Shown here in pieces: positions 7,326 to 31,421 of a stretch of DNA of 64,000 nucleotides (position 1 is the first letter of the stretch; the number at the start of each line of letters is the position of its first letter). The DNA lies in IMG/VR virus record IMGVR_UViG_3300002835_000007, positions 141,932 to 205,931 of that record; one strand, given 5' to 3'. Position numbers and translations under genes: made by a program. A model generated the notes under the pieces. It had not been told where the DNA came from. It did not search any database and saw nothing but the letters and a program-made list of their open reading frames with translations.

Positions 7326-8120
7326 TTAATTTTGTGAATCATACGTTATATTTCTATCTTTAGCGAAATAATATTCTTTTTTAGCAGTTGCTAACCACCA
7401 TCTTGCCTCAACTGGGTCAATAGTTTCTCTGTAAGATGCAAATAATGAGTCTTTTCTTTGGTTAATATGTTTGTATCCAAATCTAGGGATAACCATAACT
7501 CTAGCGTCTTTAAATGTCATTCTTAATAAGAATTCAGTAATGAAGGTTAATTTAATACTTGGTTTAAATCCTCCGAACTCATCATACATTGATTTTTTCA
7601 TTACAAACCCATCAACATTAAAGTTTTGGTAAGCTAATAGAGCATTGTTATCTAGGATTCCTAATTCATCAGAAAAACTTTGAGCCCATACTGCTTCGTT
7701 TGTAAAACCAATAAACTCATTATTTTCATTAACGTCAATAACGATAGGCATAAAGATATCTACGTTAGTATGTGCTTTTTGATATTCAACAACATTTTTA
7801 AACCAAATATTAGAATATTCATCATCAAGTTCTAAGATTGAGAACCATTCTGTTTTACATACTGACACACCATAATTTATTTGAGATGCGAAATCAGTTT
7901 GTCCATCATTTTCAGCAATAACAACAGAATTGCTATAATCACCAAAATCTAGAGTTTTAATATGTTTTACTACATCACTATTTTTAGGTGCTACAATTAT
8001 TAAAGTTTCTGGTCTAACATTTTGAGTTAAGACACTTTTAATTGCGTTATCTAATAAAGGTTTAGTCACTTCATTTAAAGCGTGCACTGGTAAAATTACA
8101 CTTATATTATTTTTTTCCAT
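7326..8120 (-). CDS. glycosyltransferase family 2
   Basis: ISVILPVH N-terminus; LELDDEY DxD-type motif; NFNVDG. Confidence 0.85.
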   Translation of the reverse strand: MEKNNISVILPVHALNEVTKPLLDNAIKSVLTQNVRPETLIIVAPKNSDVVKHIKTLDFGDYSNSVVIAENDGQTDFASQINYGVSVCKTEWFSILELDDEYSNIWFKNVVEYQKAHTNVDIFMPIVIDVNENNEFIGFTNEAVWAQSFSDELGILDNNALLAYQNFNVDGFVMKKSMYDEFGGFKPSIKLTFITEFLLRMTFKDARVMVIPRFGYKHINQRKDSLFASYRETIDPVEARWWLATAKKEYYFAKDRNITYDSQN

Positions 8121-8141
8121 ATTTTTTAATTTAATATTTTA

Positions 8142-9293
8142 TTATGCGTTAGTTGGTTCAACCTCGCTTAAAGATTCAGTTAATTTTTCTAAAACAATAC
8201 CTAATTCTGCTTTTCTACTTTCAAAAAGTTTAGTATAAACTTCAGATGCAGCAGCGATTTGTTTTTCACTAGTGTATTGACCTTTAGATTCAGCCATACC
8301 ATTTAATAATTCTTGTGGTAATGAATCTTCAAACCAAACTTTTAAATAGTTAGCGATTAGTTCTGGAATGTTTAAAGTTGTGTTAGTCCAAACACCATTA
8401 TTTTTAATTACTTTAACACCACTCTCATTTGTTGTTTCCATCCATTCTGGAACCATGTTAGGTATTTTACCAATTACTGGTGTGTTTGACTCAATTGCTT
8501 CCAATGGGAAAGTACCAAATCCAGATTGGTCATCAATCCAAACAGCTAAACAAGATTTAGATAATTCAGCAGCAAATTGTTTTTTAGGTAACCCTCTTAA
8601 TTCTTTAAATGTAATCCATTTGTAAAGTGGGTATTGTAAGTAGAATGATTTAGCTATTTTAGCAGCTTCACCATGGTTTCTAGTTAAAATAGAAACAACT
8701 GGGATTTTAGGTTTATCACTATCTGTAAAATAATCAGAAATAGATACTGGTACAACATGTGTTTGAATTGAAGGGAATAATGATTTAACATAATCCGCTT
8801 GTTTTTCAGATGTAGTAATTACATCGTTAAATCCGTAATCAACGTTCCATCTTTTACCAATTTGTAACAATTCTAATAAATAATCATAACTTTGTGATAT
8901 AACTATTTTTTTACATGGAAACCCTTTAAGTTGGTCCATAATGTTAGAAAAAATTTCTGGTATAACCACAAAATCAGAAGGTGATATGTTTAACTCTTGC
9001 CCTTCAATTGAAGCGTGAGGTAAAGCAGCATATTCTTCACCTAACCAATCAGCGACACCATTACCTTCTTGGTCACCTCTTAATTTATAATCATTTTTTT
9101 CATGTAACACACATGCACTGTATCCTAAATCATTTAAAATTTTAACGTGTTCGTAAATGTTAGCGATACCAGCGGTTGGGTTACCTTTTGTGTCTAGCAC
9201 AAAGAAATAAACTCTAAAGTTTTTAGTTTCAAAGTTATTTAAAGCCAAAGCTATTTGGCTTATTTGTTCTTCAATTTGTTTTTTTTGTTCCAT
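8142..9293 (-). CDS. glycosyltransferase, GT-B fold (GT4-like)
   Basis: DFVVIPE; C-terminal GFGTFPLEAIESNTPVIG (E-x7-E-like). Confidence 0.8.
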   Translation of the reverse strand: MEQKKQIEEQISQIALALNNFETKNFRVYFFVLDTKGNPTAGIANIYEHVKILNDLGYSACVLHEKNDYKLRGDQEGNGVADWLGEEYAALPHASIEGQELNISPSDFVVIPEIFSNIMDQLKGFPCKKIVISQSYDYLLELLQIGKRWNVDYGFNDVITTSEKQADYVKSLFPSIQTHVVPVSISDYFTDSDKPKIPVVSILTRNHGEAAKIAKSFYLQYPLYKWITFKELRGLPKKQFAAELSKSCLAVWIDDQSGFGTFPLEAIESNTPVIGKIPNMVPEWMETTNESGVKVIKNNGVWTNTTLNIPELIANYLKVWFEDSLPQELLNGMAESKGQYTSEKQIAAASEVYTKLFESRKAELGIVLEKLTESLSEVEPTNA

Positions 9294-9314
9294 ATTTTTA
9301 GTGTTATTATTTGG

Positions 9315-9683
9315 TTATTCTTTTTCTTTTAAAATACCGTAATTATATAATGTATTAAAAGCTATTTTATATCCTAATGAAGTTTTATCTAGAGCTCTTT
9401 CAGCACCTAATGAATCATCGTCAGTATCTTCGGTTGCGTCCATTAATATTTCAATCATAACTCTTAAAATATCGTATTTAGTTGCGTCAATTTCTCTTGG
9501 TCTTTCTCTTTCAACTTCTGTTATTTCAGAACTTAAAACTTTACCATTTTCATCAAGATAAGTTTTAGTTTCTTTTTCAATAATTTTTTTACCAGATTTA
9601 GTTCCGATAGATTTAATTGTGCTTTCTAAAGCATCAACATCGATGTAGTATATGTTACCGCCAAATTCAATCATGTTAATCAA
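9315..9683 (-). CDS. hypothetical protein
   Basis: 122-aa ORF coupled to the upstream gene. Confidence 0.7.
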   Translation of the reverse strand: MINMIEFGGNIYYIDVDALESTIKSIGTKSGKKIIEKETKTYLDENGKVLSSEITEVERERPREIDATKYDILRVMIEILMDATEDTDDDSLGAERALDKTSLGYKIAFNTLYNYGILKEKE

Positions 9684-10281
9684 TTTCTTCGTAATTTGTT
9701 ATTTTAGTATTTAAGATTCTATTTCTTAATTCTTCATTATTAATAAAGTCCAATATTGAATCAATCTCATAATCAGACACAACGTCTTTGTTATAAGAAG
9801 ATTTAACTTTGATACTTATTTTACCGCTTGGTTTTAATTCTAATGTTTTAGGATTAGCTGTGATTAAAACATCTACATCGTCCCATTTTTCATCGTAGTT
9901 TAGAACAAATTTTATGTTTTTAATTCGGCAGCCAGTTTTTGATAAAAAGAAGAAAGTTGAAGGAATGCTTTTTTCCACTTCTCTGCTTATTAAGATAATT
10001 TCATGTTCTCCTTCATCTTCAATATCTGTTAAGAAATTATTGAAATGATTCATTAAACCATCTGACATCTGGTCAGCATGACCAAAAATTTCTAGAGGTG
10101 CTTCTAAATATAGAAACCTATTAAGTTTATTGATGTCATCAAACTTAAAATGTTCAATTAAATTGAAACTGGTAACATCATCATTTGTGATGTCAATTTC
10201 TTCAATATACTTATTATATGTATAAGCAAATTGACCGATAAAATCTCGCAATACCTCGTTTATAGTAATACCTATCTTCAT
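9676..10281 (-). CDS. 5'(3')-deoxyribonucleotidase-like HAD protein with degenerate motif I
   Basis: MKIGITINEVLRD aligns to KxIxIDxDGVLxD; DVLI..NP C-terminus. Confidence 0.6.
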   Translation of the reverse strand: MKIGITINEVLRDFIGQFAYTYNKYIEEIDITNDDVTSFNLIEHFKFDDINKLNRFLYLEAPLEIFGHADQMSDGLMNHFNNFLTDIEDEGEHEIILISREVEKSIPSTFFFLSKTGCRIKNIKFVLNYDEKWDDVDVLITANPKTLELKPSGKISIKVKSSYNKDVVSDYEIDSILDFINNEELRNRILNTKITNYEEID

Positions 10282-10287
10282 GCTACC

Positions 10288-10316
10288 AATTTAATTGATA
10301 GGTGGTGATAAGTAAA
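10288..10316 (-). promoter_or_regulatory. host-type promoter TTTACT-N17-TAAATT, probably giving a leaderless mRNA
   Basis: -10 element ends 6 nt before ATG 10281. Confidence 0.45.
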
Positions 10317-10325
10317 GTTAAAAAT

Positions 10326-11219
10326 TTATTTTTTTGTAAAAAATGATAAAACTTTACCAAAAATACTTTTTTCTTTAATAATCTGAGATTTTGGTGACTC
10401 TGGTTTTACTATTTGTGTTTGTCTGGATTTTTCATCTAACAGTCTTTTTTTTCTATTGTCATATAACTTGATGAAATAAGAAGTCAACCTATGTCTAACA
10501 ACTTCATCAGCATTAAATTCAACGACACCAACACCTTCTTCTGGATTGTTTTTAACGTCTTCAATTAACGCTTCTAACGCACTATCGCTTTCATCTTTTA
10601 AATCTATTTGTCCAGTATCACCCAAAGCAACTACTTTAGTATTTTCAGAAAAACGTGTTAAGAATGTTTTAGAGTTTTTATGTCTAACGTTTTGGTATTC
10701 ATCAATGATAATAATACAGTTAGAAAAAGACCTACCACGAATAGAACCAAACACTTCCATTTTGATGTACCCAGCTTCCATTAATTTGTTAGTAAGTTCT
10801 TCACCAATCAATTTATAAAAAGCATCAAAGTAAGACATCATAATGAATTTAAGTTTGTCTTTTTCATCACCAGGCAGCGTACCCAAATCTTCACCTTTTA
10901 ATTGTTCAACAGACTTAACTAATTTAATTTCACGATAAATTTCTGGATTGTTTTTAAGTAACAATAATGCTTCGGCAACACTTAAAAGTGTTTTACCAGT
11001 GCCAGCTGGACCAGTACAAAAAGTCACGTCATTGGTCTTAATTGAATTGGTTAACTTCTTTTGCGTCTCATTTTTGTGTTTTATATCAATTTTAATTTGA
11101 GATAATAAAACCGTTGGTCCTTTGGTAAAACTTTCGTCTTCTGTTGTAATTTTTTTAGCTCTAGTGCTAGTAGTTCTAGTAGTTCTAGTAGTTTTTGTTG
11201 CAATAGGTTTTTTGTTCAT
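10326..11219 (-). CDS. phoH: PhoH-family ATPase
   Basis: GPAGTGKT, IRGRSF, IIIDEYQN, GDTGQID. Confidence 0.93.
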   Translation of the reverse strand: MNKKPIATKTTRTTRTTSTRAKKITTEDESFTKGPTVLLSQIKIDIKHKNETQKKLTNSIKTNDVTFCTGPAGTGKTLLSVAEALLLLKNNPEIYREIKLVKSVEQLKGEDLGTLPGDEKDKLKFIMMSYFDAFYKLIGEELTNKLMEAGYIKMEVFGSIRGRSFSNCIIIIDEYQNVRHKNSKTFLTRFSENTKVVALGDTGQIDLKDESDSALEALIEDVKNNPEEGVGVVEFNADEVVRHRLTSYFIKLYDNRKKRLLDEKSRQTQIVKPESPKSQIIKEKSIFGKVLSFFTKK

Positions 11220-11232
11220 ATATAACTTTATT

Positions 11233-11280: not shown

Positions 11281-11282
11281 TC

Positions 11283-11726
11283 TTATTTATAATTTTCAAC
11301 AACATCACTACAAACACCAATAGCTGAAGAAACATCTTCATTATGTAGCTCTGGCATAACAGCAATGCTATTTCTTATTGGTTGTTTATTTGGAAAAGCC
11401 CATATGTAATTAAGGCTTGTTAATGTAACGGTATCATTTTCATGCCAAAAATAATTAAAAGGAAAGAATTCAAAATTAGCATTGAAATAGGTCATCGCTT
11501 CTATGTTTTTACAGTGAATCCATAATTTTGAAATCCTATCTCGAAACCATCTAAAATCAACACCATATTGTGGTTCATCATGACCTAACCAGAAAATATT
11601 GTCTTTGTACCAAACATCAACTTCAACATCATAACCTTTGGATATTGCTAAGTCAATGTAAGTTGGTTCGTTCTCCCAACTCTCCATTTTTCCATTTATG
11701 TTACCTCTATGTGATATTAACTTCAT
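11283..11726 (-). CDS. glycerophosphodiester phosphodiesterase (GDPD/PLC-like) protein
   Basis: True start probably MKLISHRGN at 11726 (ATGA overlap); HRG, EN, GYDVEVDVW, LGHD. Confidence 0.8.
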   Translation of the reverse strand: MKLISHRGNINGKMESWENEPTYIDLAISKGYDVEVDVWYKDNIFWLGHDEPQYGVDFRWFRDRISKLWIHCKNIEAMTYFNANFEFFPFNYFWHENDTVTLTSLNYIWAFPNKQPIRNSIAVMPELHNEDVSSAIGVCSDVVENYK

Positions 11727-12367
11727 ATTAAATTCTTTTCTGAAAATGATTCTAAAATAAGCGGCATTGATGTTTGGCTCAAATGCATATGTGAACCTTC
11801 CCAATTATCCAAATATTCTGGTTTAGTTATTTTATTTTCACCTATCATTTTATAAAATATTGTTACAAATTCAATACCATTTTGGTTACACAATTCTTCT
11901 AAGTATCTGTTAAATTCTTCAGTAACTAAGTTTCTTTCTAAACAAGTACCAAATGAAGGTCCGCCAGTATATTGTTTTGACTCATGCCATGACGCAATTG
12001 GACCCCATGCGATAACTTTAAGACCAGCTTCTTTATATCTTAATAAAACACTAAAATATCTATCAACGCATTCTTTAACTATTTCATTAACAGTTTTAGT
12101 TTGCGATTCCATTTGTTTAATTAAATGAGCTCTAATATCAACTTCACCAAAACAAAATAAAACATAATCATTATCAATATTAACATTATAATTAATTATT
12201 TCATCAATTACTGGCATTTTATTTTCAAGTTGGTAAGCGGTTGCTGGCCCAATTCTGTAACTTTTAAAAAATGGAGTTATGTCATCAGACCTTTGTGGCC
12301 ATATTGGTTGCATTTCTTCTTTACCACTGAAAACAGCAGAGTGACTATCACCTATACAATGTATCAT
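11723..12367 (-). CDS. SGNH/GDSL hydrolase or O-acyltransferase family protein
   Basis: IGDSHS block I; GEVD; D-x-x-x-x-H-L-S C-terminal block. Confidence 0.75.
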   Translation of the reverse strand: MIHCIGDSHSAVFSGKEEMQPIWPQRSDDITPFFKSYRIGPATAYQLENKMPVIDEIINYNVNIDNDYVLFCFGEVDIRAHLIKQMESQTKTVNEIVKECVDRYFSVLLRYKEAGLKVIAWGPIASWHESKQYTGGPSFGTCLERNLVTEEFNRYLEELCNQNGIEFVTIFYKMIGENKITKPEYLDNWEGSHMHLSQTSMPLILESFSEKNLI

Positions 12368-13331
12368 AATTCATAATGTTTTTACTTAAATTGTTATAAA
12401 AATTAATTTCATCTTGTTCACCATTTTCACCACCAATAGCCCATGGGTTTTGATTAGCATAAACAGTATTAAACATAGGGTGAATACCAAATCCATTTTT
12501 AACAAATAAAAACTTTTTATTGTTATCCCTTTTGTATTTATTTAACGCTATTTCATCGTATGCGTCCACTGTTGGTTGTGATAATATATTAACCCATTCA
12601 GATGTTTTTATAAAAAACATACTATTAGTGAAATATGGTGAATGGATTTCAAATAATTCATAATTATTATCGGAAGTGAATTTATCAATATTTTTTAAAA
12701 TATAGTTATTAATTTCCATCTGAGCTTCATATGAAATCCTAAGTGGGTGAATACCTTTTGTAATAGTGTTTAATGAATTTAAACCTTCGTAAAACTTATT
12801 ATAATCCCATTCAGTAGCGTTTATTGTAAACTGATTCAAAGGTGTGTAGTCTACATTCCATAAACCATTTGGCATTGGTCTGTTTAAAAAATGTTTATAA
12901 ACAATATCTCTAACTGATAAATCATCAATAAAATCATTAATAAAAAAATCACATGATGGAATATTATTAGACATAGTTGGTGATAAAGTTAATACTTCAT
13001 CATTGTTTAACATATCAACATTTTCAATTAGGTAATCCCAAACATAATTGTTAATAAAACAATCTTCATCTAATTTAACTGAATATTCAGTATCAGTTGA
13101 AATAGCAATTCTTATTTTATTTAAGTAATTATGATGTCCGTTAATTACATGTATTGTATATTCAATACCTAAACTATCACATTTATTAACCCAATCATTG
13201 TCATGGGTTGCTAAAACATTTAATTTTAATTTTAGTTTATTTTCTGGTTTTATTTTAGATAAAAAATAGAACATTAAATTTGAGTAATCTAATCTATTGT
13301 GTGATAAATAATTTATAGTTATTGTTTTCAT
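12348..13331 (-). CDS. putative glycosyltransferase (GT-A-like)
   Basis: YSVKLDEDCFI DxD motif; glycan-island context. Confidence 0.6.
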   Translation of the reverse strand: MKTITINYLSHNRLDYSNLMFYFLSKIKPENKLKLKLNVLATHDNDWVNKCDSLGIEYTIHVINGHHNYLNKIRIAISTDTEYSVKLDEDCFINNYVWDYLIENVDMLNNDEVLTLSPTMSNNIPSCDFFINDFIDDLSVRDIVYKHFLNRPMPNGLWNVDYTPLNQFTINATEWDYNKFYEGLNSLNTITKGIHPLRISYEAQMEINNYILKNIDKFTSDNNYELFEIHSPYFTNSMFFIKTSEWVNILSQPTVDAYDEIALNKYKRDNNKKFLFVKNGFGIHPMFNTVYANQNPWAIGGENGEQDEINFYNNLSKNIMNYDTLYR

Positions 13332-15107: not shown

Positions 15108-15119
15108 ACACCAAATATA

Positions 15120-20400: not shown

Positions 20401-20414
20401 GTTTTTATTTTTAT

Positions 20415-24995: not shown

Positions 24996-25615
24996 TCGTT
25001 AAAAAAATTTGAATAATCTACGTTACGATTTTGTATATCACTAAACCCAGCTGTTTGTTTAGCCATGTTAGGATAAAAACCGTATGCGTTAAATCTGTTA
25101 TGTAATTCAGCATAATATGCGTCAACTTGTTTTTTTCTTTTAGTTAACACAGACTCTATAATTTCAAACATGCTGCTGTTAATTGCAACACATTGTAATG
25201 CAACAGTAAAGTTTAACTTGATAACTTTATCATTAATTAGATGTGGTGGTTGGCCATAGACATGGTTGCCTCCAAAATAAATGAAATCCCAATCAGATGG
25301 CACATTATTAATATATTCATCTAATTTTAAAATTTCATCCGTAAAATAAACATCATCTTCTAAAATAAGCACATTTTTAACGTTCTCTTCTTTACATTTT
25401 TTTATTATCTGAAGATGTGATTCTAATACACCTAATTCACCAGCTAATAAAGGTATTTCATTAGACATGATAGTTGTTCCATCAATAGCTGAAAAGCGTT
25501 CAACCTCTTCAATACCATATTTTTCTAATTCTTTTTTAAAAGAATCAAATCTATCTGGTCTTCTATCTAAATTAATCACATATACCTTATCAAAATATTT
25601 CTTAAAATCTATCAT
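24992..25615 (-). CDS. glycosyltransferase family 25
   Basis: YVINLDRRPDR, FSAIDG, GVLESH, LILEDD. Confidence 0.9.
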   Translation of the reverse strand: MIDFKKYFDKVYVINLDRRPDRFDSFKKELEKYGIEEVERFSAIDGTTIMSNEIPLLAGELGVLESHLQIIKKCKEENVKNVLILEDDVYFTDEILKLDEYINNVPSDWDFIYFGGNHVYGQPPHLINDKVIKLNFTVALQCVAINSSMFEIIESVLTKRKKQVDAYYAELHNRFNAYGFYPNMAKQTAGFSDIQNRNVDYSNFFNE

Positions 25616-26568
25616 TTTTTGGCTTTTTGTTCATATTTTTTATCAAGTTCTTTTACTCTATATGCGTCAAGAATATCGTTACCGTCTGTTTTAATTTTAG
25701 CGTTGAACTTGATTACGTAATAACCATTGTATTCAACTATTTTGTCATAAGAAATATTGTCATATTCATATTCTAAATAATCATCTGTACCTAATGTTTT
25801 ATATGTGATAAAATTAATTTCATTAAAGTCTAACATTGTTGAATTGATGCCATCATTCATGATTTTTTTAACTTCACTAATAAACAAACGACTAGTTCTA
25901 TTGTATTCATCTGGATATTTACTTACATAAAATTCTAATAATTTATTAGTTTTATCTATTGTTCTAACATTCATTTTTAACGTAAAGTTTTCTAAATAAA
26001 AGTTAGGTAAATTTTCTCTGATGATTATTATAGGACGTTCAGATTTATTTGTAGCAAAATAATTAATAGACTCAATAATACCATGTGTTGCAACTAAGTC
26101 ACCATTTTCATTTGTTGATTGAATAACTTCATCGAATAAAGATATATTATCGTTATTCATTGCTTGGTTACTACCTATTACAATTTCTGAGTTATCAACA
26201 ACCATTTCTAATTTATAATCATCAGATGGGTCTAATTTAACTTTTTTAAGTCCTAGTTTTTTATTAACTTTTTTAGTTTTAACAATAGGCATCCCATCTT
26301 CGTCATACCCTACAATTTCAGCAGTAACACCTTCACTTTCTTTTAGTATTTTATATGTTCTCCATCTAAGGTTCATAACTTCTTGAGTTATCTCACCTTG
26401 TTTTAATGAGTCAGCCAATTGACCTTGGGTATTTCGTTGGGTTTGATTTACATCTGAACCCAACGTTTCGCCTTGCTGCCCTAAAGCATTTTTTTCAACA
26501 TTACTCATAGCTAATGTTAACATAGCCATTCGTCTGTTAAACCATTGTTTTAATTTATTAAAAACCAT
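25612..26568 (-). CDS. hypothetical protein
   Basis: 318-aa ORF with no recognised motif. Confidence 0.7.
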   Translation of the reverse strand: MVFNKLKQWFNRRMAMLTLAMSNVEKNALGQQGETLGSDVNQTQRNTQGQLADSLKQGEITQEVMNLRWRTYKILKESEGVTAEIVGYDEDGMPIVKTKKVNKKLGLKKVKLDPSDDYKLEMVVDNSEIVIGSNQAMNNDNISLFDEVIQSTNENGDLVATHGIIESINYFATNKSERPIIIIRENLPNFYLENFTLKMNVRTIDKTNKLLEFYVSKYPDEYNRTSRLFISEVKKIMNDGINSTMLDFNEINFITYKTLGTDDYLEYEYDNISYDKIVEYNGYYVIKFNAKIKTDGNDILDAYRVKELDKKYEQKAKK

Positions 26569-26569
26569 A

Positions 26570-28219
26570 TTAATCTAAAATTAATTCGTATTGTTGTTTA
26601 ATTTCTTTAACAACATTATCACTTTTAAATTTATCGATATCTTCTGGAATGTCATGTAAATTTTTACTTAAAATATTACCAGATGAATCAACATCATATA
26701 TCCAACCTTTTTTACCACACATCCATCCTTCGATAGTTGTTCTACCTAATAAGATACCAGCTGTTTCATCACATTTATGAATATATTGCTCAACATTTGA
26801 TGTTGGACCATGATATTTAACATGTGGTTCGTTTTCAATCATACTAGGTAAGTAATTATCGTTTTCTTTACCAACAAGCCATAATTCTTGATTGTTTTCT
26901 TTGGTAGTGTTAATAAGGTCTTGAATAGTTTGTTTTCTAAGATAATCAATAGTACCAACAAATAAAATTCTTTTCTTATCTCTCTTTTCAGTTGATTTAA
27001 TTGGTTTAAACTTTTCTTCGTTTATAGGATTATAAATAACTTCAACTTTATCAGTTTCGATATTAAAATTCTTAACAATATGTTCTTTAATTTCTGGTCT
27101 TATCGCAATGTATTTTTTAATTTGTGGAGATAACACTGGTTCCTCTAAATTAATCACTTCAGAGTGAATAGAACAAATAACTGGAGTCTCTGGATATAAT
27201 CTAAGTAAATGCTCAGTAACTGGTTTATGGTTTAAATGGATTACATCAAATTCAATATTTGAAACTTTATACAAAGTATTTGGTTGAGAGGTAACATCAC
27301 CTTCTGGAGTTTTTAATAGCCATTTACCATCACCTAATTTAAAACCTGGCGGTTCTTGTAATGAATATAATTTGATACCTAATTGTTTTGCTGCTTTAGC
27401 CAAAGGTTCGCCAATACTTGAACACACACTTACGTTACAACCATCTTTAACCAACTTTTTAGCCAATTCAAAAACATATAATTCAGAACCAGTATAATTA
27501 GCAAAACTTAAACATCCAATAAGAACATCTAATTTCTCATTTTTTCTTAATTGTTTTTTAATATTAACTGGTAGTTTATCTTTAAATGCTTCAGCGAATT
27601 GTTGTCTATTAGACTCCCATTGTTCGTTTGTCATACCTATAGACAAGTGATTAACTCTAATAGATGTAATTACACCTACCTTAACACCTTTTAGATGATT
27701 CTCAAAACAAAATGTTACATCATAAAAGTGGAAACCTTCTACTGATTCATTAAACTTAATTTTCATTTTAGTTTTATCAACAGCAAAAAACAAACCGTCA
27801 ACAATAACAACTTCTTCAACTGATTGACCTAAATCTTCAGAGTAAGAAGATAACCATGATTTACCTTCATGTGTATGCTGTACTCTACCATACATTTTTT
27901 TAGATTTAACCCACCATTGGCCAGTCTCTGACATGTATTTAGTTCCAGCAACACCAATGATACCATATTCTGGATTCTTTTCAAACGTTTTTAATAATTT
28001 GTTACCCCATTGTTTAGTTTCAATAGTTAAATCATCATGACAAAAAACAACAATATCGTTTGTAGCCATTTTTAAGCCACGATTGTAAGCTTTTGTTAAC
28101 GATTCACCATTATTGATTATTTCTATCACCTCAATGTGTTTATGAAGCCCAGATGACTTTATAAGATGTTCTTTATGTTCTGGATTTGATTGTCTGGTAC
28201 AATATACTACTGTAATCAT
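26570..28219 (-). CDS. bifunctional glycosyltransferase (GT2-like N-terminus, GT4-like C-terminus)
   Basis: AYN.G, FCHDD, DGLF, FHFYD; TGSELY, ILFVG, GRTTIEG. Confidence 0.85.
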   Translation of the reverse strand: MITVVYCTRQSNPEHKEHLIKSSGLHKHIEVIEIINNGESLTKAYNRGLKMATNDIVVFCHDDLTIETKQWGNKLLKTFEKNPEYGIIGVAGTKYMSETGQWWVKSKKMYGRVQHTHEGKSWLSSYSEDLGQSVEEVVIVDGLFFAVDKTKMKIKFNESVEGFHFYDVTFCFENHLKGVKVGVITSIRVNHLSIGMTNEQWESNRQQFAEAFKDKLPVNIKKQLRKNEKLDVLIGCLSFANYTGSELYVFELAKKLVKDGCNVSVCSSIGEPLAKAAKQLGIKLYSLQEPPGFKLGDGKWLLKTPEGDVTSQPNTLYKVSNIEFDVIHLNHKPVTEHLLRLYPETPVICSIHSEVINLEEPVLSPQIKKYIAIRPEIKEHIVKNFNIETDKVEVIYNPINEEKFKPIKSTEKRDKKRILFVGTIDYLRKQTIQDLINTTKENNQELWLVGKENDNYLPSMIENEPHVKYHGPTSNVEQYIHKCDETAGILLGRTTIEGWMCGKKGWIYDVDSSGNILSKNLHDIPEDIDKFKSDNVVKEIKQQYELILD

Positions 28220-28476
28220 TTTCTAGTTAAATTATATTTTGTTATGAAATCTTCATAACTTATTTTTTCGATAGTATTATCACTAAACCCTACGTTTGGT
28301 GAAAATAGAACAAAACCCTCAGTAGATAAATCTATTGAAGGTTCTAATGCGTCTACTGCTGGTCTTTCATATTTCCAATGATTTTCATCATCAGAAATAT
28401 TTATAAATCTTCCATTGAAGATACCAGCTGTTTTAGCATGTTCTTTTAATGTTTCTATAAATTCTGCTCTAATCAT
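28216..28476 (-). CDS. hypothetical protein
   Basis: 86 aa with ATGA overlaps on both sides. Confidence 0.6.
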   Translation of the reverse strand: MIRAEFIETLKEHAKTAGIFNGRFINISDDENHWKYERPAVDALEPSIDLSTEGFVLFSPNVGFSDNTIEKISYEDFITKYNLTRK

Positions 28477-29063
28477 TTTACACCAGTTGAACCGAAACCA
28501 CCAGAACCACGTTCTGTGTTTTCGTCTATGTTATCTACTTTATTTAAATTAATAAAGTTTTTGCCGATTACAGAAGCAATAACTGCTTGTGCAATTCTAT
28601 CACCATGACTAATAGTAAAAGCTTCATCGCCATGGTTGATTAAAATAACTTTAACTTCGCCACGATAGTCAGCATCCACAGTTCCAGGTGAGTTCAAAAC
28701 AGTTACACCATTTTTAGCAGCCAAACCACTTCTAGGTCTAACTTGAATTTCAAAATTCTCTGGAATTTCAAAATATAAACCAGTAGGGATAATTCTAACA
28801 CCATGTGAAGGTATAGTAATCGGTGAATCTAAATTAGCTCTTAAATCAAAACCAGATGAACCAGAAGTTGCATATTCTGGGTCTTGGTTATTTGATTCGT
28901 TTTTAAAATTAAATTTAATTTTATGAGCATCATAATTAATACTAAATTTATCAGCGTTAAATTCGTTATCAAAATCTTCTTGCGTGTAACCACTATCTGG
29001 GTCAGCAATTAACAAGATTTTGTTTCTCATGTCTGCTATTAAGTCTTCGTTATCTAAACTCAT
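28473..29063 (-). CDS. dut: trimeric dUTPase with N-terminal extension
   Basis: SGFDL, RPRSGLA, GTVDADYRGE, RIAQ, RGSGGFGSTG; probable start MSLDN at 29063. Confidence 0.95.
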   Translation of the reverse strand: MSLDNEDLIADMRNKILLIADPDSGYTQEDFDNEFNADKFSINYDAHKIKFNFKNESNNQDPEYATSGSSGFDLRANLDSPITIPSHGVRIIPTGLYFEIPENFEIQVRPRSGLAAKNGVTVLNSPGTVDADYRGEVKVILINHGDEAFTISHGDRIAQAVIASVIGKNFINLNKVDNIDENTERGSGGFGSTGVK

Positions 29064-29064
29064 A

Positions 29065-29628
29065 TTACTTTTTAGTTTTTTCATTTTTAACAGCAAACAA
29101 TACAGCTGTTTTTAATAAATCACCTAACATTGAGTTATGATACTCAACCATTTTATCATCACTTTTATCTAAATTAATGATTGCGGTGTATTCTTGTTCA
29201 GTTAACTGGATACCGTGTGACATAGTATAATAAACACTTCTTTCACCCACTCTCATAGATGTTAAGTCTTCATTAAATTCGTACATTTTTCCTTGGTTTT
29301 TTCTGTGCCATTCTGAATCACATGGCTTGTAAAGATTTGCTTTACCAATTTGGTGAAGAAGACAAACTTTCAATAATGAGTTTTGGTCAACTTTTTCTTC
29401 TTCTGGTAATGCGTTATTGAATTTTACAGCGTAAGACCCTACTCTAAGAAGGTGGTCGATTAAACCACCTTCAAAAGCATTGTGTAGGTCTGCCATTGTT
29501 GACGCTGGAGCTTTAATAAAAGACTCCCCTAAGAATTTCATGAATTCATCATTCATGAAACCTAATTTTGTTGCAGTGTCAAAATATTTTTTTGTGTTAG
29601 CAACAATTTTTTCTTGTGTTAATGACAT
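29065..29628 (-). CDS. HD-domain-like protein (HD replaced by HQ)
   Basis: PAS..HNAFEGGLIDH, LLHQIGK, AI..H-equivalent region. Confidence 0.75.
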   Translation of the reverse strand: MSLTQEKIVANTKKYFDTATKLGFMNDEFMKFLGESFIKAPASTMADLHNAFEGGLIDHLLRVGSYAVKFNNALPEEEKVDQNSLLKVCLLHQIGKANLYKPCDSEWHRKNQGKMYEFNEDLTSMRVGERSVYYTMSHGIQLTEQEYTAIINLDKSDDKMVEYHNSMLGDLLKTAVLFAVKNEKTKK

Positions 29629-29659
29629 ATTATTTTATTTTATTAGTTTTATATTTACT

Positions 29660-29688
29660 AATATACTAACAAAATACGAATAAATCAA
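29660..29688 (-). promoter_or_regulatory. host-type promoter TTGATT-N17-TATATT
   Basis: Same hexamers and spacing as the helicase promoter. Confidence 0.65.
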
Positions 29689-29691
29689 TAT

Positions 29692-30150
29692 TTATTTTTG
29701 AAGTTTTTCAAAAACTTCAGATTTATTTATAGGTGCATATAAATGGTTTTCTTGTTCATTTAAAACACTTGGTGGTACACTAGGTGTTATTGGTTTTTTA
29801 GTTTCCAAATCATCCATAAAATCTTTAGCGTTACTTAAAATTTCTTTAATGTTTTTAGTTCCTTTTTCTTTTTTATGCGTTTCTATTCTTTCATTATCAA
29901 CAATAGCTATTTCATCTTCATCTCTTTCACCATGCGGAACCAAAGTAGGTCTACCCATTGTTGTTCGTCTCATTCTGTCCATAAGTTCAGTACGTTTCAT
30001 AACGTCCAAGATATGTTTAGCTGATTCATCTTCTTTAGGTGTTTCAGTTAATACTTGTTTAGATTCAACTTTAAGTTCTTCTTTTTCATCTTCTCTTAAT
30101 AACTCAATCATAAAGTTAAATAAAAGTTTAATATCGTCTTTTCTACTCAT
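29692..30150 (-). CDS. hypothetical charged protein
   Basis: 152 aa, coupled to the upstream gene. Confidence 0.65.
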   Translation of the reverse strand: MSRKDDIKLLFNFMIELLREDEKEELKVESKQVLTETPKEDESAKHILDVMKRTELMDRMRRTTMGRPTLVPHGERDEDEIAIVDNERIETHKKEKGTKNIKEILSNAKDFMDDLETKKPITPSVPPSVLNEQENHLYAPINKSEVFEKLQK

Positions 30151-31421
30151 TATGCTATTTCTTTTTCTTCTTTTGTTATTGTTTTTTGTTTAGCAGCAAT
30201 AAGGTTTAAATACAATTCACGTCTTTGTTCGGTTACTTTATTCAATGAATAAGTATCTTTAACTGTGTTGTGTAAATTATCTTGTAATTGTTTAACAATA
30301 TCTTGATTTTGAATTAATTTTTTAATTGACGCATACCAATCTTTATGGTTTTTAACTTCATCAATCAAGATGCCATTACCATCTTCTTCAAACCCACCAC
30401 CAAATTTAACAGCGTTTTTAATATCTATTGTATAAGGTCCAAAATTTTGAGCGATAATTGCTTTATGGTGGAAACCAGCTTCAATTACTTTTAATTGACT
30501 TTTAACCTTATTAAAGATATTTTCTTCTAGCGGTGCTAACGATACGTCAAATAAATTATAGTTAGTAGCGTAAGTAGAAATAGGTTTAGTCCAAACACGT
30601 CTATACGCTTCGTTATTAATCCCTTCAAATTCAGAATTAGGTATAAATTTCATTAAGAAATCTTTATATTCTGGACTAACTGATTTATAGTCATCAGTAA
30701 AGATTCTTTCATATGAATACCAAACACTTTCCATTGGGCTAATGTTTCTAGTTCTTTGTTCACCAGTTGTTGGGTCAATTTCAGTGTGGGTTCCTCTAAT
30801 ATCAAATCCACATAACACAAATTGAACTTTATCAATTAATTTATCTGTTGTAAGTTTAGCGACAATACCTTTTAAAATTTCTAAATCTTTTAAATGCGAT
30901 GAACCACCTAACCACCCAATTCTAAGTCTTCCATTTGATGGTTCTAAGTTAGGGGTGAATTGTTTTTCTGTTGGTTCGATTGCGTTAGCTAAAACGTGAA
31001 CATTTTTATTAAATTTAGCAATTTCATTAGCGAATAAAGTTGTTGTAGTTGTTACATTTTCAGCTAATTTAATGTTATTTAAAATCATCTCATCGATTTT
31101 ATGTGCTTTGATTAAATGATACGCTGGGTGATGTTCACCTGGAGACCAATAATCATCTAAATCCATAATGGTAACAATACCTAAAGATTTTAATTTTTCT
31201 AATAACGGACCCATTTGTTCATAATTACCTAATGTTCTATGGTAATGGATAATATCATATTGTTTTAACCATTCGTCATTGTTTAATTGTGGCTCATAAT
31301 CAACGTCAACGTGAAATTCAGTTGGGTAGTTATTTTCTAATGCGATATGAGGGTTTGTGCTTCTGTAATATGAAACACCAGTTCTGTCACTTGGTACTAC
31401 TAGTACTTTTAATTTTTTCAT
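30150..31421 (-). CDS. glycosyltransferase, GT-B (GT4-like)
   Basis: GVSYYRS..PH, DLDDYW, IGWLGGSSH, DVSLAPL..FN.VKS.LKVIEAG. Confidence 0.85.
   Translation of the reverse strand: MKKLKVLVVPSDRTGVSYYRSTNPHIALENNYPTEFHVDVDYEPQLNNDEWLKQYDIIHYHRTLGNYEQMGPLLEKLKSLGIVTIMDLDDYWSPGEHHPAYHLIKAHKIDEMILNNIKLAENVTTTTTLFANEIAKFNKNVHVLANAIEPTEKQFTPNLEPSNGRLRIGWLGGSSHLKDLEILKGIVAKLTTDKLIDKVQFVLCGFDIRGTHTEIDPTTGEQRTRNISPMESVWYSYERIFTDDYKSVSPEYKDFLMKFIPNSEFEGINNEAYRRVWTKPISTYATNYNLFDVSLAPLEENIFNKVKSQLKVIEAGFHHKAIIAQNFGPYTIDIKNAVKFGGGFEEDGNGILIDEVKNHKDWYASIKKLIQNQDIVKQLQDNLHNTVKDTYSLNKVTEQRRELYLNLIAAKQKTITKEEKEIA

What the first reader, a model, noticed from the sequence alone, without database searches (positions are those of the whole stretch)
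7326..31421. A ~24 kb capsule-locus-like glycan biosynthesis island in a phage: candidate virion glycosylation system
Seen: about 13 GT-like genes (GT2-like, GT4-like, GT10, GT25, a GT2-GT4 fusion and several unclassified DxD proteins). With them are two nucleotidyltransferase fusions, two cupins, HADs, a GatZ-like enzyme, two methyltransferases, an SGNH and a GDPD-like protein, mostly translationally coupled. No flippase, polymerase, ABC exporter or membrane priming transferase is visible, so the product is unlikely to be exported by phage genes in this window. The same window encodes at least 8 extremely Ser/Thr-rich fibres. Established: giant viruses and some mycobacteriophages glycosylate virion proteins, and cyanophage P-SSM2 has an LPS-like gene cluster. 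Inference: a soluble cytoplasmic pathway builds a methylated/acylated oligosaccharide on virion fibres or capsid. Host-surface or DNA modification are alternatives.
Basis: partly seen in the sequence, partly recalled or inferred. Interest (0 to 1): 0.82.

Follow-up and report, generated by a model that had tools for sequence, protein, structure and literature searches.

The report
Swappable glycan cassette in jumbo phage
A large freshwater phage carries about 24 kb of sugar-chain-building genes: four conserved glycosyltransferase genes frame a 15-kb cassette that related phages swap among themselves, and no export machinery is present, so the glycan is probably attached inside the infected cell, but whether to the virus particle is unproven.

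Summary
Window 7326-31421 lies in a T4-type jumbo phage contig (206 kb, about 58% complete, lake metagenomes). It holds 7 well-supported glycosyltransferase (GT) genes, 4 supported by weaker leads and 2 judged by eye. With them are two nucleotidyltransferase fusions, two methyltransferases, cupin, HAD, GatZ-like, SGNH and GDPD-like genes.

New here: 78 IMG/VR relatives share a conserved frame. It runs GT-B 30150, HD, dUTPase and the GT2+GT4 fusion 26570 on one side, and PhoH, two unknowns, GT-B 8142 and GT2 7326 on the other. Between them sits a hypervariable cassette, 15.3 kb here, whose content does not follow frame relatedness. In relatives the cassette is filled with O-antigen-type genes.

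None of 710 cassette ORFs is a multi-pass membrane protein. Four complete relatives lack a priming transferase and a flippase.

DNA glycosylation is disfavoured. Thymidylate synthase homologues are canonical and no TET/JBP or C5-methylase was found.

The virion target remains inference. The main glycan unit sits behind a host-type (Bacteroidota) promoter, not the late promoter used by terminase, protease and fibre genes. The fibres' Ser/Thr richness looks like ordinary fibre repeats.

Similar GT-rich islands are known in cyanomyophages, pelagimyophages and "moraphages". This is a new member of a known kind with an unresolved target.

The parts
31485..31512 (-). Intrinsic terminator (GC hairpin plus T-run) that ends the late-promoter unit of six small genes (34769->31512) upstream of the glycan genes
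   Evidence: A hairpin plus T-run sits at the same place in 21 of 47 relatives by a strict test.
31456..31483 (-). Promoter-like site TTTACA-N16-TATAAT directly upstream of GT 30150
   Evidence: 11/12 match. Consensus ATTTAC..N16-17..TATA(A/T)TT in 17 relatives. This class is rare in the genome, so its timing is unknown.
30150..31421 (-). Frame GT-B (GT4-like) glycosyltransferase, 423 aa, conserved in 67 of 79 relatives' loci
   Evidence: AF2 pLDDT 88.8. Foldseek GlgM/MshA/PglA/BshA at E 5e-14. phrog_7162 at E 7.7e-40. Homologue of phi92 gp164. Conservation.
29692..30150 (-). Unknown 152-aa protein, found in only a few relatives
   Evidence: No Pfam or PHROG hit. Present in 4 loci.
29658..29688 (-). 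Host (Bacteroidota)-type promoter, TTG-N20-TATATTAG (one mismatch to TAnnTTTG). It heads HD -> dUTPase -> 28216 -> fusion GT -> cassette.
   Evidence: Strict TTG-N17-21-TAnnTTTG at the same place in 24 of 32 distinct relatives.
29065..29628 (-). HD-domain protein (weak match). Part of the conserved frame, probably nucleotide metabolism rather than glycan synthesis.
   Evidence: Pfam HD at E 0.0022. Conserved in 38 loci at a median 73% identity.
28473..29096 (-). Genuine dUTP diphosphatase with a 65-aa N-terminal extension. Frame gene, not a glycan gene.
   Evidence: NF001862 at 181 bits against a cut-off of 103. Pfam dUTPase. Present in 74 of 79 loci.
28216..28476 (-). Unknown 86-aa protein
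   Evidence: No hits.
26570..28219 (-). Frame GT: two-domain fusion, Glyco_tranf_2_5 (GT-A) plus Glyco_transf_4 (GT-B), 549 aa. Last conserved gene before the variable cassette.
   Evidence: Pfam 2.4e-36 and 9.9e-13. 79 IMG/VR loci at 39-100% identity.
25612..26568 (-). Cassette-edge protein of unknown fold (helical N-terminus, beta-rich body). Not a GT. Present in about 30 relatives.
   Evidence: AF2 pLDDT 75. No PDB fold match. In BFVD it matches only an uncharacterised Myoviridae protein.
24992..25615 (-). GT25-family glycosyltransferase
   Evidence: Pfam 2e-15. phrog_2835 glucosyltransferase.
24174..24995 (-). GT-A/GT-D-like protein (lead)
   Evidence: Atlas: nearest clusters are viral GT-like, with TM 0.6-0.9 to GT2 and GT-D models. 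No Pfam hit.
23360..24211 (-). GT10 (fucosyltransferase family) glycosyltransferase
   Evidence: Pfam 1.8e-9, 37.9 bits against 23.9.
22665..23360 (-). Possible GT-A (N-terminal motif only)
   Evidence: Sequence read by eye. No Pfam, PHROG or PDB support.
21304..22677 (-). Fusion of a beta-phosphoglucomutase-type HAD and a sugar-1-phosphate nucleotidyltransferase (NDP-sugar supply)
   Evidence: Pfam HAD_2 6.5e-32 plus NTP_transferase 1e-11. NCBIfam. Homologues at 53-60% identity in diverse aquatic bacteria.
20415..21302 (-). DUF6492 protein with a GT-A-like N-terminus
   Evidence: Pfam 31 bits against 22.9. Motif by eye.
19693..20442 (-). Methyltransf_24 / O-methyltransferase-like
   Evidence: Pfam 2.2e-10.
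19371..19691 (-). Small cupin-like protein (motif only)
   Evidence: phrog_24762. His-cluster motif by eye.
18723..19367 (-). Methyltransf_24 methyltransferase
   Evidence: Pfam 1e-11.
18080..18793 (-). Unknown 237-aa protein. Its single hydrophobic stretch reads as a Rossmann-like strand, not a membrane helix.
17388..18080 (-). GT2-like (below threshold)
   Evidence: Pfam 16.7 bits against 23.3. DSD motif by eye.
17012..17371 (-). Small HAD IIIB/PNKP-type phosphatase
   Evidence: Pfam 5.7e-8.
16657..17010 (-). Cupin (mannose-6-phosphate isomerase C-terminal type)
   Evidence: Pfam 1.8e-8 and 7.2e-8.
15120..16670 (-). Fusion of a sugar-1-phosphate nucleotidyltransferase and an APH-type kinase. 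This would give a one-protein salvage route to an activated donor.
   Evidence: NCBIfam GlmU-, AglF-, RmlA- and MurU-like hits over residues 5-230. Pfam APH over 381-423. phrog_4098.
14109..15107 (-). GatZ/KbaZ-like (class II aldolase or epimerase family) protein
   Evidence: Pfam E 0.013. 4431 homologues, some named GatZ/KbaZ or aldolase.
13328..14119 (-). GT-A-like protein (lead)
   Evidence: Atlas.
12348..13331 (-). GT-A/GT2-like protein (lead)
   Evidence: Atlas.
11723..12367 (-). SGNH/GDSL-type esterase or acyltransferase (weak)
   Evidence: Pfam E 0.0021, below the cut-off. GDSHS block by eye.
11283..11804 (-). GDPD-like protein (motif only). The real start is probably the internal Met at about 11726.
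   Evidence: phrog_34507. HRG motif by eye.
10326..11219 (-). PhoH-like ATPase. First conserved gene after the cassette, not a glycan gene.
   Evidence: Pfam 1.3e-52. Synteny.
9315..10281 (-). Two conserved frame genes of unknown function (9676-10281 and 9315-9683)
   Evidence: Synteny. No family or PDB hit.
8142..9293 (-). Frame GT-B glycosyltransferase
   Evidence: Profile A2 against PDB 8xsg (Actinobacillus minor glucoside-glucosyltransferase), E 1.5e-13 (PMC12159676 listed).
7326..8120 (-). Frame GT2 glycosyltransferase, followed by the phage sigma-factor gene at 6597-7322
   Evidence: Pfam. Sigma70_r2, weak. Synteny.

Best explanation
SHOWN. The region is a clade-wide glycan-synthesis system of an uncultured freshwater T4-type jumbo phage, probably related to the 'moraphages' and infecting Bacteroidota.

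It has two layers. The first is a conserved frame with four glycosyltransferase genes (30150 GT-B, 26570 GT-A+GT-B fusion, 8142 GT-B, 7326 GT2), interleaved with HD, dUTPase and PhoH genes. The second is a hypervariable cassette between the fusion GT and PhoH (window 11283-26568, 15.3 kb).

The cassette supplies activated sugars through two nucleotidyltransferase fusions. It also carries sugar-tailoring enzymes (cupins, a GatZ-like protein, a HAD phosphatase), two methyltransferases, possible acyl or phosphodiester modifiers, and about nine further GT-like genes. Diverged phages exchange it horizontally.

Everything is soluble. No priming phosphoglycosyl transferase, flippase, polymerase or exporter occurs in any relative.

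INFERRED. The frame GTs lay down a conserved inner part on a conserved acceptor, and the cassette GTs add a strain-specific, partly methylated outer oligosaccharide, all in the cytoplasm. The most likely acceptor is a phage-made protein that ends up in the virion (capsid, fibre or decoration protein). That would give related phages different surface 'glycotypes', as in giant viruses and mycobacteriophages. The acceptor is the weakest step.
For: Phage identity:
- gp23-type capsid protein just left of the window.
- Terminase and prohead protease, tail fibres and DNA polymerase.

GT and pathway assignments.

Frame and cassette:
- Synteny across 78 relatives.
- The cassette closes in 5.8-9.5 kb in 14 loci and is longer than 10 kb in most.
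- A Pfam census of 150 random cassette ORFs from relatives gave GT2 in 18, epimerase 8, FkbM methyltransferase 8, GDP-mannose dehydratase 7, RmlD 7, GT10 7, DegT 6, GT11 4 and GT61 3.

Exchange:
- The closest relative (frame 89-93% identity) shares only 4 of 20 cassette genes.
- A relative with 72% frame identity shares 13 cassette genes at a mean 84%.
- A relative with 59% frame identity shares 5 at 86%.

No export machinery:
- 0 of 710 cassette ORFs have two or more hydrophobic segments, and none has a Bac_transf-like motif.
- With the same method, cellular loci carrying the homologous nucleotidyltransferase fusion have multi-TM ORFs in 9 of 10 cases.
- No Bac_transf or Wzx family match in 4 complete relatives, with controls positive.
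- The only multi-TM proteins of the contig are a NitT/TauT importer permease and a UVR-domain protein.

Against DNA as the target.

Other points:
- The block lies between the head and fibre modules.
- The nearest Atlas clusters for three cassette proteins are mostly viral, including giant viruses.
- Precedents: mycobacteriophage virion glycosylation (Freeman et al. 2023, as cited in PMC12619734) and clade-specific glycogene clusters of Mimivirus (PMC9614988).
Against: No sequence feature identifies the acceptor.

The main glycan unit (HD -> dUTPase -> fusion GT -> cassette) sits behind a host-type promoter. The window has a one-mismatch version and 24 of 32 relatives have a strict match. GT 30150 sits behind a third promoter type. 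Neither uses the ATATTTATA class that precedes terminase, protease and fibre genes. A conserved terminator separates the glycan genes from the late unit upstream. Co-regulation with virion genes is therefore not seen. Giant-virus glycogenes are also early (my recollection), so this is not decisive.

The fibres' Ser/Thr richness is ordinary fibre-repeat composition.

Cytoplasmic O-antigen GTs are also soluble, so lack of membrane proteins does not exclude action on host lipid-linked intermediates.

Six of the 13 GT calls are leads or judged by eye.

The contig is about 58% complete.
Confidence: 0.4

Rival explanations
1. Host-envelope remodelling. The soluble phage GTs act at the cytoplasmic face on the host's own undecaprenyl-linked O-antigen, capsule or O-glycan intermediates. 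The host's priming transferase, flippase and ligase then export the altered glycan. This changes the infected cell's surface, for example to exclude superinfecting phages or to stop progeny adsorbing to debris. Cassette variability would track host-strain glycan diversity.
For: - Gene content is O-antigen-like in the window and in relatives.
- A host-type, early-class promoter stands in front of the main unit.
- This is the published reading of similar islands in pelagimyophages and cyanomyophages (PMC7029224; PMC12801897).
- GT25, GT10 and GT11 are typical LPS or O-antigen families.
- From my own knowledge, fucose and O-methyl sugars are common in Bacteroidota glycans.
Against: - No phage in 78 loci carries any priming, flipping, polymerising or ligating component, although bacterial loci with homologous genes do.
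- About 13 GTs plus their own sugar activation look like de novo synthesis of a whole glycan rather than a side-branch modification.
- Serotype-converting phages normally use membrane Gtr proteins.
- The nearest families of three cassette proteins are viral rather than host-like.
- Homologues of the 21304 fusion are not in Bacteroidota.
Confidence: 0.3
2. DNA hypermodification. The GTs glycosylate hydroxylated bases of phage DNA to block host nucleases, as in T-even phages, RB69/DLP3 and other glycan-modified phage DNAs.
For: - Phage GTs often do this (PMC13326640; bioRxiv 10.1101/2023.12.21.572611, listed).
- The frame is interleaved with nucleotide-pool genes (dUTPase, HD) and driven by an early-type promoter.
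- Homologues of GT 30150 sit in uncharacterised GT clusters of phi92-like phages.
Against: - The only thymidylate-synthase homologue is canonical ThyA (TIGR03284, 307 bits). It keeps the equivalents of Leu143, Cys146, Asp169 and Asn177, so it is neither a hydroxymethylase nor a 5-hydroxy-dCMP synthase by the diagnostic of PMC13326640.
- The same holds in four relatives. One complete relative has no homologue at all.
- No Tet_JBP was found, but that model rang in no control genome.
- No C5-methylase was found.
- A genuine dUTPase plus ThyA imply normal thymine.
- Methyltransferases, fucosyltransferase families and 10 or more GTs exceed any known DNA glycan.
- Standard short-read metagenomes assemble the locus cleanly in many runs, which is weak evidence.
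Confidence: 0.07
3. Another soluble acceptor. The pathway makes a free or small-molecule-linked oligosaccharide, or glycosylates host cytoplasmic proteins, as a takeover or metabolic function unrelated to the virion.
For: - The pathway is fully cytoplasmic.
- The promoter is of the early type.
- The best solved relative of GT 8142 is a glucoside-glucosyltransferase acting on small glucosides.
Against: Hypervariability with horizontal cassette exchange is the signature of a surface-exposed, selected structure, not of an internal metabolite. There is no precedent of this size.
Confidence: 0.13
4. Not one system. The block is a mosaic of unrelated auxiliary genes that accumulated in a plastic region.
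For: PhoH, dUTPase, HD and several unknown genes are interspersed. At least three promoter types occur in the block.
Against: - The frame order is conserved in relatives down to about 45% identity.
- Cassette ORFs in relatives are overwhelmingly glycan genes.
- Genes overlap or abut.
- Sugar activation, tailoring and transfer functions are complementary.
Confidence: 0.05

Closest known systems
Hypervariable 'host recognition cluster' and LPS-like gene clusters of pelagimyophages and large cyanomyophages (P-SSM2, S-SCSM1, S-SCSM2R)
   Same: - T4-type aquatic myophages.
- A plastic island inside the structural region next to tail-fibre genes.
- Many GTs (13 in S-SCSM2R, including GT10, GT11, GT25 and GT2) plus nucleotide-sugar enzymes.
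- Target unknown (PMC7029224; PMC12801897).
   Different: - No detectable DNA or protein similarity to GenBank phages at the thresholds used.
- Different lineage and inferred host (Bacteroidota-type promoters).
- Here the island resolves into a four-GT conserved frame plus an exchanged cassette, with a clade-wide absence of membrane parts.
- S-SCSM2R is reported to carry an export protein gene (pgaA); none was found here.
'Moraphages' (Perez-Hernandez et al. 2025, PMC12619734)
   Same: - Aquatic jumbo phages of up to about 307 kb with predicted Bacteroidota hosts.
- Core set includes four putative GT orthogroups, PhoH, dUTPase, a sigma factor, ClpA and T4-type structural genes.
- The paper notes variable islands but does not analyse them.
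- This contig has PhoH, dUTPase, sigma, a ClpA-like gene and a gp23-type capsid gene.
   Different: - Membership was not tested with their sequences.
- No lysyl-tRNA synthetase in this incomplete contig.
- Some relatives found here are larger, 340-362 kb.
- The paper does not describe the frame-and-cassette structure, the promoters or the lack of export genes.
Mycobacteriophage virion glycosylation (Freeman et al. 2023, as cited in PMC12619734)
   Same: Phage-encoded soluble GTs near structural genes. The glycan sits on virion proteins and shields them.
   Different: - Those systems have about two GTs in the late structural operon, and the glycosylation was shown experimentally.
- Here there are about 13 GT-like genes with their own sugar activation and a host-type promoter.
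- No experimental evidence exists here.
Autonomous glycosylation of giant viruses (PBCV-1 capsid glycans; clade-specific glycogene clusters of Mimivirus), PMC9614988
   Same: - Virus-encoded nucleotide-sugar pathways plus soluble GTs.
- Clusters whose content differs between clades.
- Bacterial-type and methylated sugars.
- Several cassette proteins have their nearest Atlas clusters in giant viruses.
   Different: - Those are eukaryotic viruses with a proven virion target.
- No sequence-level orthology was shown here.
Bacterial O-antigen and capsule loci
   Same: - Nucleotide-sugar genes plus many GTs and modifying enzymes.
- Hypervariable content between conserved flanks.
- Slightly lower GC.
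   Different: No initiating transferase, flippase, polymerase, chain-length regulator or ABC exporter.
GT cluster gp163-gp166 of Escherichia phage phi92 and related Stephanstirmvirinae
   Same: gp164 is a homologue of GT 30150 (26% identity over 82% of the protein). It sits in a four-GT cluster of a large myophage.
   Different: - Function also unknown.
- No variable cassette or sugar-activation genes in the 12.8 kb viewed.

Membership tests
Bacterial Wzx/Wzy- or ABC-dependent O-antigen/capsule locus | Nucleotide-sugar synthesis genes plus several GTs in one locus, hypervariable between conserved flanks | tested here: met
Bacterial Wzx/Wzy- or ABC-dependent O-antigen/capsule locus | Initiating phosphoglycosyl transferase (Bac_transf or WecA type) | tested here: not met
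   No Pfam hit in the window. 0 of 710 cassette ORFs have the PG(I/L)TG-type motif. No Bac_transf in 4 complete relatives, with the control ringing in 9 of 14 genomes. WecA type was covered only by the hydropathy census.
Bacterial Wzx/Wzy- or ABC-dependent O-antigen/capsule locus | Flippase and polymerase, or an ABC exporter (multi-pass membrane proteins) | tested here: not met
   0 of 710 cassette ORFs have two or more hydrophobic segments. Cellular controls were positive in 9 of 10 loci. No Polysacc_synt in 5 relatives. The contig's only permease is a NitT/TauT importer.
Phage DNA glycosylation systems (T-even, RB69/DLP3, methylase+TET type) | Enzyme that makes a hydroxylated or hydroxymethylated base (variant thymidylate-synthase homologue, or C5-methylase plus TET/JBP) | tested here: not met
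   Thymidylate-synthase homologues are canonical in this genome and in 4 relatives. No DNA_methylase. No Tet_JBP, but that model rang in no control genome, so the Tet_JBP result is weak. The contig is 58% complete, but 3 of the relatives with a canonical homologue are complete.
Phage DNA glycosylation systems (T-even, RB69/DLP3, methylase+TET type) | Modified nucleosides in virion DNA | not testable with these tools
   Needs LC-MS or long-read signal data.
Serotype-converting Gtr-type phage systems | GtrA flippase, GtrB bactoprenol GT and a membrane GtrC; temperate phage | tested here: not met
   No membrane proteins in the block. Lysogeny genes were not searched for.
Phage virion glycosylation (mycobacteriophage type) | GT genes embedded in or next to the virion structural module | tested here: met
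   The block lies between the capsid gene (G000 139.4-141.2 kb) and the tail-fibre genes (window 34746 onward).
Phage virion glycosylation (mycobacteriophage type) | Co-expression with late structural genes | tested here: not met
   By promoter motifs only. The late-class ATATTTATA motif precedes terminase, protease and fibre genes. The glycan units use a host-type promoter and a third type, and lie after a terminator. No expression data: the RNA run was too sparse.
Phage virion glycosylation (mycobacteriophage type) | Glycan detected on capsid or tail proteins | not testable with these tools
   Needs glycoproteomics of virions.
Giant-virus-type autonomous glycosylation clusters | Virus-encoded sugar activation, soluble GTs and sugar methyltransferases in lineage-specific clusters | tested here: met
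   The methyltransferase substrates are untested.
Giant-virus-type autonomous glycosylation clusters | Glycosylated virion surface | not testable with these tools
   No isolate or proteome available.
Cyanomyophage/pelagimyophage hypervariable GT-rich island | T4-type phage; plastic island in the structural region beside the fibres; rich in GT and LPS-type genes | tested here: met
   Descriptions in PMC7029224 and PMC12801897. Homology to those islands was not detected with GenBank phages.
Moraphage lineage | Shared core genes (PolB, PhoH, dUTPase, sigma, ClpA, four GT orthogroups, LysRS, T4-type structural genes) and phylogenetic placement | tested here: inconclusive
   Most listed functions are present. 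LysRS is absent from the partial contig. No moraphage sequences were available for a tree.

The most novel reading that the evidence does not exclude
Large aquatic phages of Bacteroidota coat their virions with complex, methylated, strain-specific oligosaccharides built entirely in the cytoplasm. A conserved four-GT frame starts the glycan on a conserved virion protein. A horizontally exchanged cassette sets the outer structure. The result would be a phage 'serotype' system analogous to bacterial O-antigens and to giant-virus fibril glycans, and under diversifying selection.
Probability: 0.35. Interest if true: 0.8.

Novelty: new member of a known kind. Interest (0 to 1): 0.55.

Why it matters
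GT-rich, LPS-like islands in big aquatic phages have been noted since P-SSM2 was sequenced, but their target has never been established.

This locus gives a clean comparative framing of the problem:
- a conserved set of four GTs that must recognise a conserved acceptor;
- a cassette exchanged between diverged phages;
- no export machinery in 78 relatives;
- no route to a hydroxylated DNA base.

That narrows the question to two testable options: phage protein, or host lipid-linked intermediates. It also names the enzymes to test first.

If the virion is the target, complex phage 'glycotypes' would be widespread in lakes. This would bear on host recognition, on grazing and decay of virus particles, and on how phage surfaces evolve.

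Tried and rejected
1. Near-identity and protein searches against GenBank phages gave no close relative. PhoH and PolB gave only distant hits.

2. I first read the whole minus-strand block as one operon from the late-type ATATTTATA promoter at 34792-34784, which would have supported a virion role. I rejected this after finding:
- a conserved terminator at 31512-31485;
- a separate promoter before GT 30150;
- a host-type promoter before the HD gene that heads the main glycan unit.

3. Generic sigma-70 and terminator scans are at background over 6000-25900.

4. 25612-26568 was suspected to be a DxD-type GT. Its AF2 model matches no GT and no solved fold.

5. Single-sequence PDB searches for 22665, 18080 and 20415, and profile searches for 9676 and 25612, gave nothing.

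6. PHROGs found nothing for the six small late genes or the genes left of the island.

7. The one metatranscriptome holding the locus has only a few short contigs on 22001-22772. That is too little to show transcription or operon structure.

8. A host link through cassette gene origin failed. Homologues of the 21304 fusion occur in Methylophilaceae, Prochlorococcus single-cell assemblies and Patescibacteria, not Bacteroidota.

9. The fibres' Ser/Thr richness as a glycosylation signal: rejected as ordinary fibre-repeat composition.

Full report
CONTEXT. The window is the last 64 kb of a single 205,931-bp viral contig. CheckV rates it about 58% complete. GC is about 29%.

It is a T4-type myophage:
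- a gp23-family capsid gene lies at contig 139.4-141.2 kb, just left of the window;
- terminase large subunit and prohead protease lie at 131.7-137.9 kb;
- tail-fibre genes start at window 34746, and a family-B DNA polymerase lies at 47445-51311.

It has no close relative among GenBank phages. IMG/VR holds many relatives, including complete genomes of 294-362 kb with terminal repeats. The same genotype, at 99-100% identity, is present in 19 lake or freshwater DNA runs from 2016 to 2024.

Upstream of about 60 genes, and of the DNA polymerase, the genome uses TTG-N17-21-TAnnTTTG. From my own knowledge this is the Bacteroidota promoter type, so a Bacteroidota host is inferred. The gene set and the inferred host fit the recently described 'moraphages' (PMC12619734). 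That paper lists four core GT orthogroups, PhoH, dUTPase, a sigma factor and ClpA, and mentions unanalysed variable islands. Membership could not be tested directly.

THE OBSERVATION. Genes from 264 to 34769 are all on the minus strand and mostly overlap or abut.

Seven GT genes are well supported:
- 7326 (GT2), 23360 (GT10), 24992 (GT25) and 26570 (Glyco_tranf_2_5 plus Glyco_transf_4 fusion), by Pfam above the curated cut-offs;
- 20415 (DUF6492, with a GT-A-like N-terminus);
- 8142, whose family profile matches the solved GT-B enzyme 8xsg at E 1.5e-13;
- 30150, whose AF2 model (pLDDT 88.8) matches GT-B enzymes GlgM, MshA, PglA and BshA at E 5e-14, and which hits phrog_7162.

Four more are leads: 12348, 13328 and 24174 from the Atlas, and 17388 as a sub-threshold GT2. 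Two rest on motifs read by eye: 22665 and 18080.

The two nucleotidyltransferase fusions are confirmed (15120: nucleotidyltransferase plus APH-type kinase; 21304: beta-PGM-type HAD plus nucleotidyltransferase). So are two Methyltransf_24 genes, one cupin and a small HAD phosphatase. The GatZ-like, SGNH, GDPD-like and second-cupin assignments are weak.

PhoH, a genuine dUTPase and an HD protein are interspersed and are not glycan genes. 25612-26568 is not a GT. Simple hydropathy finds no membrane protein in the block.

ANATOMY FROM COMPARISON. In 78 related loci the gene order is conserved:
- fibre genes (opposite strand);
- six small unknown genes (34278 to 31512);
- GT-B 30150, HD 29065, dUTPase 28473, fusion GT 26570;
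- a variable stretch;
- PhoH 10326, 9676, 9315, GT-B 8142, GT2 7326, sigma factor 6597.

The variable stretch is 15.3 kb here. It is 5.8-9.5 kb in the 14 relatives where it closes within the fetched flank, and longer than 10 kb in most others. 62 of 78 loci share at most one of the window's 20 cassette genes.

A Pfam census of 150 randomly drawn, non-redundant cassette ORFs from relatives is dominated by glycan genes. These include GT2, epimerases/dehydratases, FkbM methyltransferases, GDP-mannose dehydratase, RmlD, GT10, GT11, GT61, DegT aminotransferases, hexapeptide acyltransferases and nucleotidyltransferases.

Cassette content is decoupled from frame relatedness:
- the nearest relative (frame 89-93% identity) shares 4 cassette genes;
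- a relative with 72% frame identity shares 13 at a mean 84%;
- a relative with 59% frame identity shares 5 at 86%.

This is the pattern expected from horizontal cassette exchange, as at bacterial O-antigen loci.

NO EXPORT ROUTE. None of 710 cassette ORFs from the relatives has two or more hydrophobic segments. The 14 with one segment are Rossmann-type strands, and none carries the conserved motif of Bac_transf priming enzymes.

The same method finds multi-pass proteins within 8 kb in 9 of 10 cellular loci that carry a homologue of the 21304 fusion. In 6 of those 10 loci there are proteins of 8-12 segments.

Four complete relatives and one 86%-complete relative have no Bac_transf and no Wzx-family gene, while the control genomes ring. 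The contig's only multi-pass proteins are a NitT/TauT importer permease and a UVR-domain protein in the early region.

DNA AS TARGET. The contig's single thymidylate-synthase homologue scores as thymidylate synthase (307 bits against a cut-off of 108). It keeps the LPPCH and RSVDTFLGLPFN motifs, that is, the equivalents of Leu143, Cys146, Asp169 and Asn177. PMC13326640 gives Asp169-to-Asn as the mark of 5-hydroxy-dCMP synthases and Asn177 as the specificity residue. The same motifs hold in four relatives, and one complete relative has no homologue at all.

No ThyX, C5-methylase or Tet_JBP was found. The Tet_JBP model rang in no control genome, so that negative is weak. With a genuine dUTPase, normal thymine is expected. 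DNA glycosylation is unlikely.

TIMING. Two abundant upstream motif classes exist. The first is the host-type class above, concentrated at 2-124 kb of the contig and before the DNA polymerase. The second is ATATTTAT(A), about 20-25 nt before the start codons of 35 genes, including terminase, prohead protease and four fibre genes. I take the second to be the late class.

The late motif stands at window 34792-34784, before the first gene of the minus block, and is kept in 22 of 22 distinct relatives. However, a hairpin and T-run terminator at 31512-31485 closes that unit after six small genes.

GT 30150 then has its own TTTACA-N16-TATAAT site, conserved in 17 relatives and rare elsewhere in the genome. 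The HD gene heads the contiguous run dUTPase, 28216, fusion GT and cassette. It is preceded by a host-type promoter: a one-mismatch version in the window and a strict match in 24 of 32 relatives.

By motif evidence, then, the main glycan unit is transcribed like early genes. This removes the co-regulation argument for a virion role. It does not exclude that role, since giant-virus glycosylation genes are also early (my recollection).

FIBRES. Nine of the ten proteins richest in Ser+Thr in the contig are fibre-module proteins of the window (0.20-0.29 against a median of 0.11). Their sequence consists of short fibre-type repeats. The maximum in any 30-residue window is 0.53, and there are no mucin-like tracts. 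This is not specific evidence for glycosylation.

MECHANISM AND RANKING.

Shown:
- a conserved four-GT frame;
- an exchanged cassette with sugar activation, tailoring, methylation and many GTs;
- no membrane steps;
- no route to a hydroxylated base.

Inferred: the frame enzymes act on a conserved acceptor and the cassette enzymes build a strain-specific outer oligosaccharide in the cytoplasm.

Ranking of the acceptor:
- A phage virion protein, about 0.4. In favour are the precedents in mycobacteriophages and giant viruses, the position between head and fibre modules, the mostly viral affinities of cassette proteins and the de novo character of the pathway.
- Host lipid-linked envelope intermediates exported by host machinery, about 0.3. 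This is the published reading for similar islands in pelagimyophages and cyanomyophages and fits the early-type promoter.
- Another soluble acceptor, about 0.13.
- DNA, about 0.07.
- Not one functional system, about 0.05.

NOVELTY. GT-rich plastic islands beside tail-fibre genes are already described in cyanomyophages and pelagimyophages. Four core GTs are noted for moraphages, and phi92-like phages carry an uncharacterised four-GT cluster that includes a homologue of 30150. The locus is therefore a new member of a known kind.

This analysis adds:
- the frame-and-cassette resolution;
- evidence of cassette exchange;
- the clade-wide absence of export and priming genes, with a positive control;
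- the exclusion of the known DNA-hydroxylation routes;
- the promoter map.

The target remains open.

Noticed in passing
Whole contig G000; examples at window 34784-34792 (-), 47445 upstream, 29658-29688 (-): There are two conserved upstream motif classes. A Bacteroidota-type TTG-N17-21-TAnnTTTG precedes about 60 mostly small genes at 2-124 kb and the DNA polymerase. ATATTTAT(A)AATAAA lies about 20-25 nt before the start codons of 35 genes, including terminase, prohead protease and fibre genes. Both are kept in relatives. This gives a host-phylum inference and a putative late-promoter consensus for this phage clade.
   Followed up: yes
window 31456-31483 (-): A third promoter-like type, TTTAC(A/T)-N16-17-TATA(A/T)T, lies immediately after a terminator and before GT 30150. 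It is conserved in 17 relatives but rare elsewhere in the genome. Which sigma factor reads it is unknown. The phage's own sigma-like gene is at 6597-7322.
   Followed up: partly
window 25612-26568 (-): A 318-aa protein with a helical N-terminus and a beta-rich body lies directly after the fusion GT in about 30 relatives. It has no fold match in the PDB, and in BFVD it matches only an uncharacterised Myoviridae protein. It could be an acceptor or accessory protein of the system.
   Followed up: partly
window 31512-34769 (-): Six small conserved genes of unknown function form a late-promoter unit between the fibre genes and the glycan frame. 32908-33366 and 33373-33849 are paralogues (E 1e-47). 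No Pfam or PHROG hits.
   Followed up: partly
G000:C1:124683-125933 (L160:1480-2757): The thymidylate synthase is 425 aa, with insertions of roughly 25-50 residues between conserved blocks, yet it keeps all canonical active-site residues. Homologues in relatives are 345-442 aa.
   Followed up: partly
G000:C1:12191-12961 and 118315-119004: The phage carries a NitT/TauT-family ABC importer permease (6 hydrophobic segments; homologues on viral-size contigs) and an ABC ATPase-like gene. These may be a nutrient-uptake auxiliary system.
   Followed up: partly
window 61278-63606 (+): Three tandem paralogues of about 221-231 aa (E about 1e-28) lie at the end of the fibre module. Fibre proteins 34746-39665 and 42978-46094 share repeats with each other and with 57841 and 59381.
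   Followed up: no
window 34746-34830: The listed TTG start of the 1639-aa fibre ORF overlaps the divergent gene 34278-34769. The in-frame ATG at 34830 is the more likely start, which leaves a 60-bp divergent promoter region.
   Followed up: partly
G000:C1:110590-110922: A further GT2-family gene (74.6 bits) lies outside the island, in the middle of the contig.
   Followed up: no
L185 (Methylophilaceae LSUCC0401 chromosome 489880-507247), L186-L188 (Prochlorococcus single-cell assemblies): The HAD-nucleotidyltransferase fusion has homologues at 53-60% identity in streamlined aquatic bacteria of unrelated phyla. In Methylophilaceae it lies next to three 8-11-segment membrane proteins. This suggests a shared aquatic pool of glycan-island genes.
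   Followed up: partly
window 22001-28000 in runs X1-X19: The same cassette genotype (0-0.7% divergence) recurs in lake and freshwater metagenomes from 2016 to 2024, so it is a persistent population rather than a one-off assembly.
   Followed up: partly
L174 (Escherichia phage phi92, record 102200-105376): phi92 gp163-gp166 form a cluster of four predicted GTs of unknown function. gp164 is homologous to the frame GT 30150. Homologues also occur in Klebsiella and Campylobacter phages and in a 735-kb uncultured phage.
   Followed up: partly
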